64,000 bases of DNA from Vitrella brassicaformis CCMP3155 (taxonomy: Eukaryota; Protista; Chromerida), in assembly GCA_001179505.1 (NCBI GenBank), contig CDMY01000254.1:1-64000 (forward strand), given 5' to 3'. Made by a program: the position numbers and the translations under genes. The notes under the pieces were generated by a model that ran no database searches, had not been told where the DNA came from, and worked only from the letters and a program-made list of their open reading frames with translations. Below, one piece after another: positions 15,097-21,671 of the stretch (positions are counted from its first letter, which is position 1; each line of letters begins with the position of its first letter).

Positions 15097-15350
15097 GTGG
15101 CGGCCCGATTCGTCGTGAAACGCTTCTAAAATCGGCTCTCCTCTTGAGTGTGAATCTCCGCTGGTGAGCAACAGCACTGGTGTGGGGTGACCCTTTGTTT
15201 TTTCAGTTCGACCGTGATCGACCGTTTTGTCTGACCGCACGCCTTCCGTCTGAGAGAGACGACGACCGTGCTGAAGTGTCAGCCCGATTCGCGGACAACA
15301 CGCGAGTTAAACACAACAACCAACCAACCAACCAAGCAGCGAGAGATCCA

Positions 15351-17060
15351 ATGTCGTTGAGCGAGTATGAGGTGGTGGCCACGAGTCCCGAGGCCGTACG
15401 ACTTCGTGTCATTCGTCCTGACGACATCCCCGAGCACAGCGAGCCGCTAGATCCGCAGGCAGTCGAGAGCGCGCGACAGATCCTCGATGAAGTCAAGAAG
15501 GCGGGGAGAGCGGCGGTAGTCAAGTATGCGCTCAAGTTCGGGGACATCGGCAGCGACAGCGAGAGGCTCATCTACACGCGGGAGGATCTGAAGGACGCCT
15601 ATGAGGGCCTTCCTGGTACGCAGCAAGGGCTGCTCATGCGGGTGGCGTCGCGGATCCGACGGTTCGCTGAAGCGCAAAGGGCTTCGGTCAATGCAATGCA
15701 GGTGAGATGTTGATAGACAAGACAAACTCAAATGGACGCACGTTCGTTTGATCTGCAGATATCCGTTCCGGGGGGCTTTGCGGGTCAGTCTGTGGTGCCC
15801 GTCGAAGCAGCAGGGTGCTATGCGCCCGGAGGCAGATACCCACTCCCCTCTTCTGTCCTGATGACGGCCATCACTGCTCGAGTGGCAGGAGTCAGCCACG
15901 TTGTGGTCGCTTCCCCTAAGCCGTCTGCCGTGACGAAAGCCACAGCATACATCGCTGGCGCAGATGCATTGCTGGGCATTGGCGGTCCCGCAGCAATTGG
16001 TGCGCTGACGTATGGCGTGACCGATCTTGGTGTCCCTCCTTGCAACGTCATCGTGGGACCCGGCAACAAGTACGTAGCTGCGGCCAAGGGGCTGGTCAAC
16101 GGCACGGTCGGCATCGACATGATCGCTGGACCGTCTGAGCTGCTAGTCATCTCTGACGAGAAGGCCGACCCGAGGTGAGGAGAAGCGAGGGCTGAGATAT
16201 CTCCACATGTCGTGCTCTTTGTTCCAGAGTGGTTGCGAGTGACTTGTTGGCTCAAGCAGAGCACGACACGGTTGCCCGTGTGGTGCTCGTGACGACCTGC
16301 GCCTCCCTCATCCCGGCTGTGGAACAACAACTCACGCAACAACTGGCGGTGAGAAACAGGAAAACGCCAAGGGTGTTTCTCACCCGTGGTAGTGTCTTTC
16401 AGGTATTGCCAACTCGCGACGTGGCCTCGGAGGCGTTGAAAAACTCCTTCTGTCTGTTGGCCGGCTCGACTGAGGAGGCCATTGACATCGCCGACAAGAT
16501 CGCACCGGAACACCTCGAGGTCAGGAGACGCTATAAAGGGACACTTAGCTCATACGTGCCTTTAATACAGCGAGCGACTCGGTTGCGTTGTGCAGGTGGT
16601 GACAGAGGACGCCGAGGGTGTGTCTCGTCGCCTGAAGAACTACGGTGGCCTGTTCATTGGCAACAGTGCAGCGGAGGTGCTGGGCGACTACGGCATCGGA
16701 CCCAACCACACCCTTCCCACATCAGGGACGGCCAAGTACACAGGTGAGTGAAGTGTTCGGTGGTACACAATTTGATGTGGCTCTGTGTGGCTGCCTGCCT
16801 CTGCAGGTGGCCTGTCTGTCTTCAACTTTTTGCGGATACGGACGTGGCTGAACATTCATGACTTGCACGACCCAACCTGCCAGCAGGCAGTCAGGTGATG
16901 TGTATACGGTGCAGGCGGCGCATACCGAACATCGATGCGTTTCCGCTTTGCAGGGACTCAGTTGACTTGGCCGAGCTGGAGGGCCTGGTCGGCCACTCAC
17001 GATCAGCCCGATGCCGCCTGACGAACCAGTCGTCCCTCACCCCCCCTGCACCTTCTATCC
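15351..17060 (+). CDS. hisD: Histidinol dehydrogenase domain of the fusion
   Basis: GCYAPGGRYPLPSSVLM, GPGNKYV, IDMIAGPSE, DLLAQAEHD, APEHLE, LGDYGIGPNHTLPTSG, AELEGLVGHSRSA. Confidence 0.96.
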
Positions 17061-20000
17061 GGGTGCAGCAGAGCGAGTCGCCTACCCCAGACACACAGGT
17101 TACTAGCGCATCTCTCTCACAACTAGATCACCTAGCAGACACAAACGCTGGAAAACTACAGGTAAAGCGGCAGGCAGATTGACGCACATCCGCACATGAA
17201 ATGCATGCGCAAAGAAGGGAGTCTGTGCATCCATGTGTGGTTGTGTCTGGTGTCAGCGCTTGATCCGTCCGGACGTGGGCAGCTTGATGGCCTACACCCC
17301 CGTCAAGCCCCTCGATGTGGTGGCTGAGGAGATAGGCGTGCCCATCGACGACCTCTGCAAGCTAGACGCCAATGAGAACATATACGGCATACAGTCAGAC
17401 GTCGTGCACCAAATTATGGTAAGACAGATGCAGTTGCGTACGATGGCTGTTGTTCCTCTGCGTTTGTCTCTCTGTTCAGGCCAGCAGTCGTGCAATGCAC
17501 ATTTATCCCGACCCCGACCAAAATGCACTCAGGGACATGCTCAGCAAGTTCACAAAAAGGTATCAGCAGATGCAGTTCCGAGTACTCTTGCCTTCAAATT
17601 GATATGTATTGTGCACATGCAGGCCTCGTGAGGAGATCGTGTGTGGTGCCGGCGCTGATGACATGATCGACCTGATCATCAGGATAGTGCATCCACGGAA
17701 GATTGTCATCCCGACACCGACATTCCCCATGTTCAAGTTCTTCGCACTCATTCTTCGGTGACTTCTGATCAATCACGTACAACAGGCACAACCACATCTC
17801 ACTGCCAATGCCTGTGTGCTGCAGCTGCGAGGTTGTGGAGGTCCCCCTTTCCCCCCCTCCCTCGTTCTCTCTGCCCCTGCAGCAGATGCTCGAAGAGATC
17901 CGGAGAGGAGCATCGCTGGTCTTTGTCGCGTCCCCAAACAATCCCACTGGCAAATCTGTGGCGCGAGCGCAACTGGAGACACTACTGAAGGAGGAGTGCA
18001 TTGTCGTTGTCGACGAGGCATACATCGAGTTTTCCGACAAGGGTGATGTCACTGATATGATGGACAAGTGGGTCACGAGACAATGGATCGGTCTGAGGAA
18101 TAGAAGACCTTTCTTCGATGCGTCCCTTGTTGTGTGCAGGTACCCGAACTTGGTGATACTGCGCACTTTCTCAAAGTGGGGTGCAATGGCCGGCCTGCGA
18201 TGCGGATACGGTCTCTTCCACCCACTACTCGCGGACAGAATCAGACAGGTCAGTGGCGAGCTCGGCAATATGGATATGAATCGCGACAGTTGCTCTGTTG
18301 TTATCAGATCAAGATCCCCTACAACGTGAGCGTCGCAGCCGAGTCAGCTGCACGGGCATCGCTGCAGCACTTCGAGGTGCTCGCGCAGCAGATCGACCGC
18401 ATCAAGGCCGAGCGTTACCGACTGCTGTCCATCATCAAGTCCTCCCCGCAGCTGCACTTCCTCCATCCGTATGACAGCGACACCAACTTCATCCTCTGCA
18501 AGGTGGATCCAGGCAGCGCAGAAGGCCTAAGGGATCAACTGAGGAAGAGAGGCGTGCTCGTCAGGTGAGGCCGCAGATACAGTGTCAACGGGTCGACGTT
18601 TTGTTGGTGTCCTCAGGTACTACGCGACAGGCATGCTCAAGAACTTCATTCGTATCAGCTGCGGTCGACCTGAGGACACGGATCGCCTCATTCGTGAGCT
18701 GTGTACGCTGCCTCTATTCGCGTCGGAAGGGGGACTGCCCCTGCCTCCACAGATTCCCCCAAAACCACTCAAAACGACGCCCACGGGTCAGCAGAAAATA
18801 AAGAAAGGGCATGGGAGACGGTCACTTTCATCTTTGTTTTTCCAGCTTTGTTGTTTGACATGGATGGGGTCCTTGCTGACGTGTCCCAGTCGTACAGAAA
18901 GGTTAGCAAGATGCACTTCCTCCGCAAGTGACAGTCTCCACTCACGTGCCAATGCTTGTCCGCTCCAGGCCACTCTCTTGGCAGCCGAGAAGTACGGGGC
19001 CAAGTGCAGCAGTGAGGACATAGTGGCCATGAAACGACAGGGCAACGCAAACAACGATTGGATACTCACGCAAAGGCTCATCAAGTCGAAGACGGAGCGA
19101 GAGGTCAGATCTATTGGTGGGACGGGTAGACGTGCGATGTCAGATTTCCATCGCCTGGTGCAGGTTCCTTACGATGACGTGGTGGCATCGTTCCAAGAGT
19201 ACTACAACGTCGCCAAGGCGAGCGAGAAGTGCATCATCCCCTTACCTGTATTGGAAAGCCTGAGGGCGCAAGGCACGCTGCTGGCCGTCGTCACGGGCAG
19301 ACCAAGGTACACGAGGGAGGGTAGTACATTGATAGACGTATGGATGCACGGTCGGTCATGATGCATCAATCCTTATCCTATACCGACTCGACAGAATGAG
19401 GTCCATACATTCGACACTTTGCCTGAACGAATGACTATGTTACACATCATGAATGCCGCCACAGCCAAGATGCATACAGTCAAAGTTTTTTTGTGTGTTC
19501 TTTAGGACCGAGGCTGAGTATTTTCTGAGCGAGCATGGGCTGCGTGGGGTATTCTCCGTCATTGTGACAATGGAGGACGGACCCCCCAAGCCCGACCCTG
19601 GACCCGTGCTTTTGGTGAGTCTTCGGAGGGCAGGATGCGTTGGCGTCTGACCACGTGATTGCATGTAATCTCCTTTCTCTGTAGGCCCTGGACCACCTGG
19701 GCTTGGTGTCGTCGGGCATCGAGGGTTGGGTTGGGATGATCGGCGACACACCTGACGACATCCGCAGTGCAGTGGCGGCACACAAGCACCTCCAGCAGCA
19801 GTCCTCTTGTGCGATCGATGTCATGGGCATGGGGGTGCTGACTCCTGAGGAAGCACAGAAGGACAGGTAGCCTCCGGGCGCGAGGAGGGTGACAGCACAC
19901 ATGCATGCACGTGTTTTCCATGCTTCAGGTCGCATCGCATAGCTGCAACTGACTGTCTGGTTGAGGCCGGGGCAGTGCGCGTAGCCAGGACATACGAGTA

Positions 20001-20952
20001 AGCACAGGAAGAAGAGGATAGCGACTAGCTGAGATGGTGCCAAACTGATCCACACGTATATGATATTGCGTTGCAGTGACTTGTTGCCCTACATTTTGCC
20101 CACCACCAGCTCCCCGCCGCTGGTTCACAGTCACGACGTCTCTGGTGCCGCCGGCTTCACTGACCGTCAGAGCATGCGTATCGGGGAGGTGTCGCGGACG
20201 ACCAAAGAGACCAAGATATCCTGCCGTGTGTGCCTTGGTGGGTCGGGCAAGGCGGACGTCAACACTGGTGTGGGCTTCTTCGATCACATGCTGCAGCAGC
20301 TCGCCAAGCACGGACGCTTTGACATCAGGTGAATGATAAAGAAGACAGCGAGACAGTGTGTGAGCACGAAGGAAATCCTGTGTGCAGCCTCAATTGCGCG
20401 GGTGATCTGCACATTGACGACCATCACACTGTGGAGGACTGTTCGATCGCACTCGGCACCTGCTTTGACAAGGCACTGGGTAGTCGCGGTGGCATCAACC
20501 GGTTCGGCACGGCTTACGCGCCTCTTGACGAGAGCCTGGCACGAGCAGTGGTGGACCTGTCGGGCAGGGGACACTCGGAAGTGCACATACCTTTCGAGCG
20601 GGAAAAGGTGCGGGAAGGAATCGTATCTACCCTCGCCCCACATATCTGCTGTTCTCCTTCGAAGGTCGGCACGTTGTCGACGGAGATGGTGAGCCACATT
20701 TTCTATTCTCTGGCCAGCGCCATGAAGGCCACCATCCACATCGATCTGATTCGGGGTGTCAACACGCACCACAAGGTAGACGGCATGAAATGCAACAGCC
20801 GCACCAGACGACCATTGCCTTTGTCATCCCAACCTTCACTATTCCTTGCGCAGGTCGAGTGCAGCTTCAAGGCATTCGCTCAAGCATTGCGGACAGCCTG
20901 CTCCATAACGAGAGCGGCAACAGACATCCCGTCAACAAAGGGAATGCTGTGA
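15351..20952 (+). CDS. Multifunctional histidine-biosynthesis protein: HisD - HisC - HAD phosphatase - imidazoleglycerol-phosphate dehydratase, one multi-exon gene
   Basis: All three inter-domain junctions splice in frame via GT-AG introns: 17162-17256 (phase 0, ...GKLQ|RLIRPDV), 18787-18845 (phase 1, ...TPT|ALLFDMDG), and ~19999-20077 (...RTYD|DLLPYILP...TKETKI). Stop GML* at 20952. Confidence 0.9.
17257..18720 (+). CDS. hisC: Histidinol-phosphate aminotransferase domain of the fusion
   Basis: KLDANEN, GAGADDMID, SPNNPTG, VVVDEAYIEF, PLP-lysine motif LRTFSKWGAMAGLRCGY, PYNVS, SDTNFIL, IRISCG. Confidence 0.96.
18846..20060 (+). CDS. HAD-superfamily (capped, subfamily IA-like) hydrolase domain of the fusion
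   Basis: Motif I LLFDMDGVLADVSQSYR, cap with GNANNDW, motif II VVTGRP, motif III MEDGPPKPDP, motif IV MIGDTPDD. Confidence 0.9.
20170..20952 (+). CDS. hisB: Imidazoleglycerol-phosphate dehydratase domain of the fusion
   Basis: SRTTKETKI, TGVGFFDHML, HIDDHHTVED, RFGTAYAPLDESLA, STEMVSHIF, NTHHK|VECSFKAF, PSTKGML*. Confidence 0.97.
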
Positions 20953-21671
20953 CTTTCTATGAATCGTGATGGAGTATTGCATGTGGATTTGAGTATGGGA
21001 CACGATCTATAGCTGCAAATGGTGTGCCTCTCGTCGTATCGAGTCGTATCGTTGATGGGGGTCCCCGACTCCATCGTGTCAGTATCCTCTGTAGTGCCAT
21101 CAAGTAGGTTGCTCCCGGATTGAGAGACGTTGCCGACAAAACAGGGGGAGGGGGGGACAAGGCCATGCTGTGAACACTTTTCTGCCGCATGTTACCAGAT
21201 TTCCTGAGTGTCTTTTACCCTCTCTCTGTCTCTGGAGGCTCCATCGGCATGAAGTCCTCTGCAGACTGACCGACTCACCCAATACTCCTGAAACGGCACA
21301 GGGCGCAACTCTGATCGATCCTTTCGGGTAGGATTGAAGAAGACACGGCTCCGGTGAATAGTCGCTGTGCCGTGCACTCGAGAAGACACGGCTCCATGTT
21401 AGTTCTGTCGCCGCTATGATAACACGCCTGGAACGTGGACCAATCACTCAAATCACTCATTCATCATTGCAAAGAGGTCCAGCAGTGAATCATTCATTCA
21501 CTCATTCACTGATCATTCTCGAGTCTTGTTTCAATGAGAAGGAGTCTGTTTCGGTGAGAACGTGTTTGCTGTTGCCCCTTTGGTGTTTAGGGGGTTGACG
21601 AGGACTTGAAAACAGATGAAACAGAAGGGCCAAAATATAACAAAAACATAGCACCGAGACACTCGGAAGAT

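What the first reader, a model, noticed from the sequence alone, without database searches (positions are those of the whole stretch)
15351..20952. One polypeptide for the last four enzymes of histidine biosynthesis (HisD-HisC-HAD-IGPD)
Seen: four motif-complete domains joined by in-frame GT-AG splices (17162-17256, 18787-18845, ~19999-20077), with Pro/Ser-rich linkers and a single ATG and stop. Established: IGPD, HisC, histidinol-phosphate phosphatase and HisD catalyse consecutive steps 6-10. The classic fusions are fungal HIS4 (HisIE-D), HIS7 (HisHF) and enterobacterial HisNB. Inference: this is a metabolon-like multifunctional enzyme that may channel intermediates. I recall a HAD-IGPD fusion in Phytophthora, so part of the architecture may be shared with other SAR lineages.
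Basis: partly seen in the sequence, partly recalled or inferred. Interest (0 to 1): 0.85.

Follow-up and report, generated by a model that had tools for sequence, protein, structure and literature searches.

The report
Four histidine enzymes in one protein
This alga makes the enzymes for the last five reactions of histidine synthesis as one 1326-residue protein from a single 24-exon gene; the fusion is real and transcribed, but Chromera and a dozen or more other protists have it too, so it is a conserved, little-described design rather than a one-off.

Summary
On the + strand, ATG 15351 to TGA 20952, 24 exons and 23 GT-AG introns (52-199 nt) give one 3981-nt ORF of 1326 aa (143 kDa). The domain order is HisD, HisC, HAD phosphatase, IGPD.

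One intron-free 4305-nt contig in a public run matches this model exactly. Two further runs show the same junctions, including all three inter-domain splices.

All four domains keep their catalytic motifs. The HAD is the capped TIGR01548 type, not the E. coli HisB-N type. In 74 of 80 bacterial loci examined it is fused to HisC, directly upstream of hisB, in his operons that show no other phosphatase. It is therefore very probably the histidinol-phosphate phosphatase.

The fusion is not unique. Chromera velia has a colinear orthologue (51% identity), filed in UniRef as "IGPD". At least 12 proteins from unnamed sources have the same architecture, and the three whose contigs I inspected look eukaryotic, two with uninterrupted ORFs. 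Stramenopiles, Rhizaria and Amoebozoa carry partial versions (C-N-B, N-B, D-N-B, IE-D-C-N).

I found no paper describing the D-C-N-B protein. Channelling and a giant assembly remain untested.

Verdict: a new variant of a known kind, of moderate interest.

The parts
15351..20952 (+). Whole coding region of the four-domain gene: 24 exons, 1326 codons plus stop. Introns: 15702-15758, 16175-16227, 16349-16402, 16520-16595, 16744-16806, 16895-16953, 17162-17256, 17419-17479, 17560-17622, 17758-17824, 18068-18139, 18249-18307, 18565-18616, 18787-18845, 18902-18968, 19104-19163, 19307-19505, 19615-19684, 19867-19928, 19998-20076, 20329-20387, 20608-20664, 20776-20853.
   Evidence: Model built. All joints are seen in spliced contigs of runs X7, X1 and X2. 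P0190 is identical over residues 263-1326.
15266..15350 (+). Transcribed leader (minimum 5' UTR). It contains no ATG.
   Evidence: The contigs of X7 and X1 start at 15266. ATG scan. The start coincides with a repeat and contig break, so it is not a mapped transcription start.
15351..17020 (+). Histidinol dehydrogenase (HisD) domain, residues 1-436, exons 1-7. Key motifs: QAEHD 16253-16267, PEHLE 16505-16519, GDY..NHTLPT 16683-16721, EGLVGH 16979-17005.
   Evidence: Pfam PF00815 tiles profile positions 10-362 over exons 1-5. Alignment to 4g07 HisD keeps all the motifs. Coordinates.
17021..17256 (+). Linker 1 (residues 437-483, 53% P/S/T/Q), followed by the junction intron 17162-17256 (95 nt).
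   Evidence: The joint 17161|17257 is seen in X1, X2 and X7. If the intron were retained, a stop would follow at 17180.
17257..18707 (+). Histidinol-phosphate aminotransferase (HisC) domain, residues 484-842. Key motifs: SPNNPTG 17931-17951, DEAY 18012-18032, PLP lysine in TFSK 18162-18209.
   Evidence: Pfam PF00155. Full-length alignment to 8bj4 HisC, E 3e-73.
18708..18850 (+). Proline-rich linker 2 (residues 843-870), containing junction intron 18787-18845 (59 nt).
   Evidence: The joint 18786|18846 is seen in X1, X2 and X7.
18851..19989 (+). Capped HAD-IA phosphatase domain of the TIGR01548 type, residues 871-1097; candidate histidinol-phosphate phosphatase. Key motifs: DMDG 18854-18871, SYR 18884-18901, K..GNANNDW 19029-19061, TGRPR 19287-19506, KP 19582-19599, GDTPDD 19742-19759.
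   Evidence: Single exons hit TIGR01548. Relatives pass that family's cut-off. The family invariants are kept. AF2 model pLDDT 95.2 with a helical cap. Fused to HisC inside bacterial his operons.
19990..20176 (+). Linker 3 (residues 1098-1133), containing junction intron 19998-20076 (79 nt).
   Evidence: The joint 19997|20077 has no positional ambiguity in X1, X2 and X7. If the intron were retained, TAA at 19999 would end the protein after the HAD domain.
20177..20952 (+). Imidazoleglycerol-phosphate dehydratase (IGPD) domain, residues 1134-1326, plus stop. Key motifs: RTTKET 20192-20215, DHML 20276-20293, DDHHTVED 20413-20439, NTHHKVE 20755-20859.
   Evidence: Pfam PF00475. NCBIfam HisB profiles are tiled 2-197 across exons 21-24. 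Alignment to 6fwh and 1rhy, E 1e-63.
20608..20664 (+). In-frame 57-nt intron inside the IGPD domain. It is removed in X1, X2 and X7 but retained in database protein P0190, where it adds 19 residues that solved IGPDs lack.
20953..21150 (+). 3' UTR (minimum length; the contigs run past the stretch that was laid).
   Evidence: table 8.

Best explanation
This is one nuclear gene of a chromerid alga. Earlier notes of the scan name the species as Vitrella brassicaformis. Its fully spliced mRNA encodes a single 143-kDa polypeptide with four enzymes in the order HisD, HisC, HAD phosphatase, IGPD.

Together the four domains perform the last five reactions of histidine synthesis:
- IGPD dehydrates imidazoleglycerol phosphate.
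- HisC transaminates the product to histidinol phosphate.
- The HAD domain removes the phosphate.
- HisD oxidises histidinol twice to give histidine.

Shown here: the gene structure, the spliced transcript, intact catalytic motifs in all four domains, and conservation of the whole architecture in Chromera and in other database proteins, some on eukaryote-type contigs.

Inferred:
- The HAD domain is the histidinol-phosphate phosphatase.
- The protein stays in one piece in the cell.
- It is cytosolic, because the N-terminus has no signal or transit peptide.
- The fusion grew stepwise. A HisC-HAD fusion shared with bacteria came first; IGPD, its operon neighbour, was then joined at the C-terminus; HisD was joined at the N-terminus in one eukaryotic lineage.
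For: Gene and transcript:
- Hand-built model with 23 GT-AG introns and one ORF.
- One 4305-nt intron-free contig spans the whole CDS in X7. Matching spliced contigs occur in X1 and X2, from a second study.
- P0190 is identical over residues 263-1326.

Domains:
- Pfam and NCBIfam matches.
- Motif-level alignments to solved HisD, IGPD and HisC structures.

HAD as the phosphatase:
- Relatives score 144-171 bits against TIGR01548, whose cut-off is 140.2.
- Vitrella keeps the family invariants D-x-D-G, S-Y-R, K, G-N-A-N-N-D-W, G-R-P-R, K-P and G-D-T-x-D-D.
- In locus L001 the operon reads HisG | HisC-HAD | IGPD | HisH | HisA | HisF-IE | HisD and shows no other phosphatase.
- In 74 of the 80 best bacterial loci the HAD sits in one ORF with HisC, and in all but one of these a separate IGPD gene follows immediately.
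- The family profile hits PDB 6iah at E 4e-20. That chain carries Y-D...R...D at the positions that PMC10804674 defines as the fingerprint of the archaeal histidinol-phosphate phosphatases nmHisN and toHisN.

Conservation:
- Chromera velia P0184, 1386 aa, is 51% identical and colinear over residues 12-1326.
- Uninterrupted four-domain ORFs lie on eukaryote-type contigs L007, L008 and L090.
- L003 carries the same gene with about two introns.

Tree of the HisC-HAD region:
- Bacteria separate from the eukaryote-type rows with support 100.
- All D-C-N-B rows fall in one clade with support 98.
Against: - There is no protein-level evidence. The long low-complexity linkers could be cut after translation.
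- No enzyme activity was measured. The HAD assignment rests on fusion and operon context and on a fingerprint. I could not align the domain directly to nmHisN because I had no copy of that sequence.
- The Vitrella HAD domain could not be scored whole against TIGR01548, because the tools do not accept a spliced sequence. Only its exons (E about 1e-5) and its relatives were scored.
- The fold search returns generic capped HAD-IA phosphatases and does not single out a histidinol-phosphate phosphatase.
- Contigs drop rare isoforms, so minor transcripts that end between domains cannot be excluded.
- A relative inside the chromerid clade (P0004) is a stand-alone HisC-HAD, so the fusion can come apart.
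- The tree used the quick method, many rows have deviant composition, and most rows are unnamed.
Confidence: 0.8

Rival explanations
1. The gene is transcribed as one mRNA, but the product is a polyprotein. The linkers are cleaved, or internal initiation or alternative isoforms are used, so the cell actually contains separate HisD, HisC, HAD and IGPD enzymes.
For: - The linkers are 28-47 residues long and of low complexity.
- Retaining intron 7 or intron 20 would place stops at 17180 or 19999, giving HisD alone or HisD-HisC-HAD (read directly).
- One isoform with a retained intron exists in a database (P0190).
- A close relative, P0004, is a separate HisC-HAD.
Against: - All three junction introns are removed in every contig of three runs.
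- The single ORF is kept, without introns, in distant relatives, which argues for selection on the fused reading frame.
- Other multifunctional His proteins, such as HIS4 and E. coli HisB, work as intact fusions (general knowledge; PMC1963479).
Confidence: 0.1
2. The HAD domain is not the histidinol-phosphate phosphatase. It has another substrate or a regulatory or scaffolding role, and step 8 is done by an unlinked inositol-monophosphatase-like or PHP-type enzyme elsewhere in the genome.
For: - NCBIfam lists TIGR01548 only as a hypothetical equivalog.
- The closest folds are phosphoglycolate, sugar-phosphate and pyrophosphate phosphatases.
- HAD specificity is hard to read from sequence (PMC10804674).
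- I could not survey the rest of the genome for other phosphatases.
Against: - The same HAD is fused to His enzymes in at least seven different architectures in eukaryotes and bacteria.
- It lies inside his operons that otherwise lack step 8.
- The catalytic aspartates and the cap residues matching the nmHisN/toHisN fingerprint are invariant or nearly so.
Confidence: 0.08
3. The fusion is an artefact: a chimeric assembly, or a mis-joined gene model of neighbouring genes.
For: - Prokaryote-style gene callers did split or truncate such genes elsewhere. The L003 gene appears as a 758-aa and a 526-aa protein.
Against: - Genomic contig X3 is colinear with the window.
- cDNA-type contigs from two studies join all the exons in frame.
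- Independent orthologues have the same order of domains.
Confidence: 0.01

Closest known systems
Chromera velia four-domain protein (P0184, UniRef entry named 'Imidazoleglycerol-phosphate dehydratase')
   Same: It has the same four domains in the same order. It is 1386 aa long, 51% identical and colinear over residues 12-1326, and it is the sister of the window's protein in the HisC-HAD tree.
   Different: It is only automatically annotated, under the name of its last domain. I found no paper that describes it.
Enterobacterial HisB (hisNB): bifunctional histidinol-phosphatase / IGPD
   Same: A HAD phosphatase lies N-terminal to IGPD in one chain. The order D-C-(N)B equals the hisD-hisC-hisB order of the hisGDC[NB]HAF[IE] operon (PMC1963479).
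   Different: The HAD is of another subfamily. The domains of this family score best on TIGR01548 (capped, subfamily IA). TIGR01656, the HisB-N model, stays below its cut-off (60 bits or less against 84). The AF2 model has a helical cap. HisD and HisC are also joined here.
Bacterial HisC-HAD fusion in his operons (Planctomycetota, Myxococcota, Gemmatimonadota, Acidobacteriota)
   Same: It has the same HAD family and the same HisC-to-HAD junction. The IGPD gene follows directly, so the order C-N-B is already present in the operon.
   Different: IGPD and HisD are separate cistrons, with hisD about 3.3 kb downstream. The bacterial rows form a separate clade from all the eukaryote-type rows.
Archaeal HAD histidinol-phosphate phosphatases nmHisN (Nmar_1556) and toHisN (PMC10804674)
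   Same: These are capped HADs found between hisC and hisB. Their cap fingerprint is Y, D or R, K or R, E or D. The Vitrella domain has Y885, R886, K909 and D917 with the same K-to-D spacing of 8. The paper predicts that deltaproteobacterial homologues carrying R at the second position are phosphatases too.
   Different: I made no direct alignment to nmHisN. The link runs through the motif positions and the PDB 6iah match of the family profile. The Y-to-K spacing is 8 residues shorter here.
Acanthamoeba heptafunctional His protein (PMC6029752) and fungal HIS4 / HIS7
   Same: They are large eukaryotic polypeptides that join several histidine-pathway enzymes, including HisD.
   Different: Their composition is different. 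The Acanthamoeba protein has HisH/F, A, I, E, D and G, with IGPD separate. HIS4 is IE-D. None of them contains HisC, a phosphatase or IGPD.

Membership tests
Histidinol dehydrogenase (PF00815 / TIGR00069) | Profile match over the whole domain | tested here: met
   Exons 1-5 tile Pfam profile positions 10-362. The C-terminal part aligns to 4g07 residues 257-428.
Histidinol dehydrogenase (PF00815 / TIGR00069) | Zinc-binding and catalytic residues: Q and H in QAEHD, E-H in PEHLE, D in GDY, and the C-terminal H | tested here: met
   All are conserved in the alignment to Brucella HisD 4g07. The roles of the residues come from my knowledge of the E. coli enzyme.
Histidinol-phosphate aminotransferase (HisC, PF00155 class II) | Full-length similarity to solved HisC, with the PLP lysine (TFSK), DEAY and SPNNPxG motifs | tested here: met
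   8bj4 at E 3e-73 over residues 9-362 of the query, with all the motifs aligned.
TIGR01548 family HAD-IA hydrolase | HAD motifs I-IV plus the family invariants (SYR, K, GNANNDW, GRPR) | tested here: met
   Alignments A1 and A2 and the positions.
TIGR01548 family HAD-IA hydrolase | Score above the curated cut-off of 140.2 bits | tested here: inconclusive
   The spliced Vitrella domain could not be submitted whole. Its single exons give 25.6 and 23.5 bits. Relatives that are 44-47% identical score 144-171 bits.
nmHisN/toHisN-type histidinol-phosphate phosphatase | Cap fingerprint Y24, D25 (or R), K56 (or R), E64 (or D) | tested here: inconclusive
   Y, R, K and D are present at matching relative positions and are invariant or nearly so in the family. 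6iah aligns with Y-D...R...D. There is no direct alignment to nmHisN.
nmHisN/toHisN-type histidinol-phosphate phosphatase | Hydrolysis of histidinol phosphate | not testable with these tools
   This needs an enzyme assay or a complementation test.
HisB-N type histidinol-phosphatase (TIGR01656, HAD-IIIA) | Match above the cut-off to the HisB-N domain model; no large cap | tested here: not met
   TIGR01656 gives 26-60 bits against a cut-off of 84.15, always below TIGR01548. The AF2 model shows a four-to-five-helix cap.
Imidazoleglycerol-phosphate dehydratase (PF00475) | Both D/N-x-H-H-x-x-E motifs, the DHML histidine and full profile coverage | tested here: met
   NCBIfam profiles are tiled 2-197. 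6fwh and 1rhy match at E about 1e-63 with the motifs aligned.
Imidazoleglycerol-phosphate dehydratase (PF00475) | Mn-dependent 24-mer assembly | not testable with these tools
   Known for the plant, yeast and bacterial enzymes (general knowledge). No oligomer prediction was run.
HIS4-type fusion (HisIE-HisD) | PRA-CH and PRA-PH domains N-terminal to HisD | tested here: not met
   HisD starts at residue ~20-36, with no PF01502 or PF01503 match. Amoebozoan relatives do have IE-D-C-N.

The most novel reading that the evidence does not exclude
The polypeptide assembles through its C-terminal IGPD into the usual 24-mer core. The HisD and HisC parts then pair as dimers around that core. The result would be a particle of about 3.4 MDa (24 x 143 kDa) that carries 96 active sites and passes imidazoleglycerol phosphate through to histidine without releasing intermediates. 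The same design would be shared by chromerids and a set of uncultured protists.
Probability: 0.15. Interest if true: 0.75.

Novelty: new variant of a known kind. Interest (0 to 1): 0.5.

Why it matters
- It is the largest fusion I met that covers the end of the histidine pathway: five consecutive reactions on one chain. It complements the published Acanthamoeba fusion, which covers the start of the pathway. Protists have therefore repeatedly packed this pathway into giant proteins.
- Its junctions act as a natural "Rosetta stone". They tie a HAD family that NCBI still labels hypothetical (TIGR01548) to the histidinol-phosphate phosphatase step. This is the step of the pathway that is hardest to annotate. 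The assignment would apply to chromerids, stramenopiles, Rhizaria, Amoebozoa and several bacterial phyla.
- The range of architectures (C-N, C-N-B, N-B, D-N-B, D-C-N-B, IE-D-C-N, C-N-D) gives a clean system for studying how operon neighbours become fusion proteins.
- Animals lack the pathway, and IGPD is an established herbicide and drug target.

Tried and rejected
- **Separate adjacent genes.** Rejected. Stops appear only if the junction introns are kept, and every contig removes them.
- **Representative-library search with a HAD exon piece.** It gave only 20 weak hits and no four-domain protein. It served only as a way in to the HisC-HAD and HAD-IGPD proteins.
- **Finding the window's own full-length protein in the protein databases.** Only the partial P0190 turned up. 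The length limits and the ban on stop-containing references kept me from querying with the whole spliced sequence.
- **Fetching nmHisN for a direct alignment.** The single genome scan returned only bacteria, so the link to nmHisN stays indirect.
- **Identifying PDB 6iah.** The library holds no informative paper. My memory that it is the Thermococcus thioreducens HAD phosphatase is unverified.
- **Foldseek on the HAD model.** It returned only generic capped HAD-IA folds and gave no functional discrimination.
- **Introns in all three linkers as fusion scars.** Rejected as evidence. With 23 introns in 3981 nt, about 1.9 are expected in the 333 nt of linker, and orthologues without introns carry the same fusion.
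- **Literature searches for this architecture.** Nothing was found. The library lacks most subscription journals, so this is not proof that no description exists.
Full report
**Observation**

ORF listing and three-frame translation of 15100-21300 showed that the HisD, HisC, HAD and IGPD similarity is broken into many short pieces, not four blocks. Reading the sequence, I placed 23 GT-AG introns and assembled the exons. The introns are 52-199 nt long, median 62. The result is a single frame of 3981 nt (1326 codons) from ATG 15351 to TGA 20952, with no internal stop. The other 20 introns lie inside the domains.

**Transcript evidence**

The look-up of sequencing runs listed eight runs that hold the stretch. 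I laid four of them.
- Run X3 gives one colinear genomic contig.
- Run X7 gives one 4305-nt contig that starts at 15266, runs past 21150 and lacks every intron.
- 15 joints are printed and 8 more are not shown, which makes 23.
- For the stretches whose pieces were not printed, the record coordinates match my exon lengths to the base: 473, 79, 106 and 1449 nt.
- Runs X1 and X2, from a different study, give spliced contigs of 2764 and 2462 nt covering the end of HisD through the 3' UTR. A 335-nt contig crosses the HisD/HisC junction.
- All three inter-domain joints are therefore seen in three runs from two studies.

Contigs cannot show rare isoforms or transcript ends. All the contigs, genomic ones included, break at about 15266 beside a high-depth repeat, so the 5' end is not mapped.

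ATG 15351 is nevertheless the only ATG in the leader. Orthologue N-termini align within the first dozen residues.

A database protein, P0190 (1083 aa), is identical to residues 263-1326 of the model. The one difference is that it keeps the in-frame intron 20608-20664 as 19 extra residues inside IGPD, which solved IGPDs lack.

**The four domains**

- Pfam finds PF00815, PF00155 and PF00475 on the exon pieces.
- NCBIfam HisB profiles are tiled from position 2 to 197 across the last four exons.
- Using P0190 as a stand-in for the spliced protein, the HisD part aligns to Brucella HisD 4g07 with QAEHD, PEHLE, GDY..NH.LPT and the C-terminal histidine intact.
- The HisC part aligns end to end with 8bj4 (E 3e-73), including the PLP lysine in TFSK, DEAY and SPNNP.G.
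- The IGPD part aligns to 6fwh and 1rhy (E about 1e-63) with both HH..E motifs.
- The linkers are 47, 28 and 36 residues long and rich in P/S/T/Q.
- The N-terminus is acidic, with no signal or transit peptide, so I read the protein as cytosolic. This is an inference.

**The HAD domain**

Its exons hit only TIGR01548, a "hypothetical equivalog". Whole HAD domains of relatives that are 44-47% identical pass that model's cut-off, at 144-171 bits against 140.2. The enterobacterial HisB-N model TIGR01656 stays below its own cut-off.

Alignments of 11 and 28 family members show invariant D-x-D-G, Y (in S-Y-R), K, G and D (in G-N-A-N-N-D-W), R (in G-R-P-R) and the motif III/IV residues. Vitrella has all of them. 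An AlphaFold model built on that alignment is confident (pLDDT 95.2) and shows a Rossmann-like core with a helical cap. Foldseek returns only generic capped HAD-IA phosphatases.

The functional evidence is contextual but strong.
- On an 82-kb bacterial contig the order is HisG | HisC-HAD | IGPD | HisH | HisA | HisF-HisIE | HisD, with overlapping stops and starts and no other phosphatase.
- A scan of reference prokaryote genomes found 572 loci with the family motifs, mainly in Planctomycetota, Myxococcota ("Deltaproteobacteria"), Gemmatimonadota and Acidobacteriota.
- In 74 of the best 80 loci the HAD is in one ORF with HisC, and in all but one of these a separate IGPD gene follows directly.

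Kinateder et al. (PMC10804674) showed that Nmar_1556, a capped HAD lying between hisC and hisB in Nitrosopumilus, is a specific histidinol-phosphate phosphatase. They defined a cap fingerprint of Y24, D25, K56 and E64. toHisN has R and D at the last two positions. Euryarchaeal and deltaproteobacterial homologues have R at the second position.

The Vitrella domain has Y885, R886, K909 and D917, with the same K-to-D spacing. The family profile's best PDB hit, 6iah (E 4e-20), carries Y-D...R...D at the aligned positions. I could not obtain nmHisN for a direct alignment, so membership in that enzyme family is likely but not proven.

**Relatives and architectures**

The weak first search led to HisC-HAD and HAD-IGPD proteins. 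Through their contigs it led to L003, where a prokaryote-style gene caller had split a four-domain gene with about two introns into 758- and 526-aa pieces.

Using those pieces as queries I found colinear four-domain proteins.
- Chromera velia CCMP2878 has P0184: 1386 aa, UniRef name "Imidazoleglycerol-phosphate dehydratase", 51% identical over residues 12-1326.
- At least 12 proteins from metagenomes or Logan assemblies are 41-48% identical to the window's protein.
- Three of their contigs carry eukaryotic neighbours such as PP2C/PUB, MAGE, PKD channel, RPL28e and RGS. On two of them the gene is an uninterrupted ORF.

Other architectures that contain the same HAD:

| Architecture | Where found |
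|---|---|
| C-N-B | Hondaea, Aplanochytrium, Cafeteria; one deltaproteobacterial MAG |
| N-B | Phytophthora and other oomycetes, Nannochloropsis, brown algae. One Aphanomyces entry is even named "TIGR01548 family HAD hydrolase". |
| D-N-B | Lotharella, Bigelowiella, Amorphochlora |
| IE-D-C-N | Vermamoeba, Difflugia |
| C-N-D | A cluster of about 1070-aa proteins, mostly from ENA assemblies |

Phalansterium has a HisA-HisIE-HisD-HisC protein of 1415 aa.

**Tree**

A quick maximum-likelihood tree of the HisC-HAD region used 83 rows and 580 columns.
- It separates the 24 named bacterial loci, plus three unnamed or MAG rows, from all the eukaryote-type rows with support 100.
- It puts all 16 D-C-N-B rows in one clade with support 98. 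That clade also holds three D-C-N rows, two C-N-B rows and one C-N row, some of which may be truncated gene calls.
- It joins Vitrella with Chromera, P0050 and the stand-alone HisC-HAD P0004 with support 98.

I read this as one origin of the HisC-HAD junction, one crossing between bacteria and eukaryotes (direction not shown), and one addition of HisD at the N-terminus. Caveats: the quick search, heterogeneous composition, unnamed rows and no root.

**Comparison with what is known**

- The domain order D-C-N-B equals the gene order hisD-hisC-hisB(NB) of the classic enterobacterial operon (PMC1963479). However, the phosphatase comes from a different HAD subfamily.
- In the bacteria that share this HAD, hisD lies at the far end of the operon. 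The resemblance to E. coli is therefore partly convergent.
- Large His fusions are established: HIS4, HIS7, and the Acanthamoeba heptafunctional protein, whose IGPD is separate (PMC6029752).
- None of the papers I could search describes a HisD-HisC-phosphatase-IGPD protein. The 2007 survey of his fusions does not mention hisC at all. Searches pairing Vitrella or Chromera with histidine terms found nothing relevant.
- The library omits most subscription journals, so I rate this as a new variant of a known kind. It is not categorically new.

**Mechanism and its limits**

Shown: one gene, one spliced mRNA, one ORF, four catalytically complete domains, and conservation.

Inferred: the HAD domain performs step 8, and the chain stays intact.

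Speculative: IGPDs form 24-mers, and HisD and HisC are dimers (general knowledge). The fusion could therefore build a particle of about 3.4 MDa and favour hand-over of intermediates. Nothing here tests that.

Organism: earlier notes of the scan name Vitrella brassicaformis. My own data show only that the nearest named relative is Chromera velia.

Noticed in passing
window 15200-15350: A repeat with very high depth lies just upstream of the start codon: 200 or more against about 25 (DNA run X3) or 40-70 (run X7) along the gene. It has many loose ends, and every contig, DNA and RNA, breaks at about 15266-15268. It is followed by a (CAAC)n-like low-complexity run at 15308-15347. Because of this the mRNA 5' end is unmapped.
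   Followed up: partly
window 20608-20664 (protein P0190): The in-frame 57-nt intron inside IGPD is spliced out in three runs. A JGI-derived protein retains it, adding 19 residues in a place where solved IGPDs have none. This may be an unspliced minor isoform.
   Followed up: partly
L005 61-2007 and L006 53-1999 (protein P0004): Transcript-like contigs of 2.4-2.5 kb encode a stand-alone HisC-HAD of 648 aa with its own stop and 3' UTR. In the tree it groups with Vitrella and Chromera, which suggests a secondary fission of the four-domain gene in a relative.
   Followed up: partly
L003 2175-6146: A four-domain gene with about two short introns was split by the gene caller into a 'HisD-HisC' protein (758 aa) and a 'HAD-IGPD' protein (526 aa). 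Database counts of D-C, D-C-N and N-B architectures from metagenomes may therefore be inflated by such cuts.
   Followed up: yes
L010-L089 (bacterial loci): The TIGR01548 HAD is widespread, with 572 matching loci. It is almost always fused to HisC in the his operons of Planctomycetota, Myxococcota, Gemmatimonadota and Acidobacteriota. NCBIfam still lists the family as a hypothetical equivalog.
   Followed up: partly
proteins P0157, P0186, P0188, P0191, P0052: Further giant His fusions turned up. Phalansterium has HisA-HisIE-HisD-HisC (1415 aa). Proteins of about 1470-1500 aa (P0186, P0188, P0191; two from EukProt, species not looked up) carry HisIE, HisD, HisC, the HAD and a His_biosynth barrel. 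A 46-member cluster, mostly from ENA assemblies, has the order HisC-HAD-HisD.
   Followed up: no
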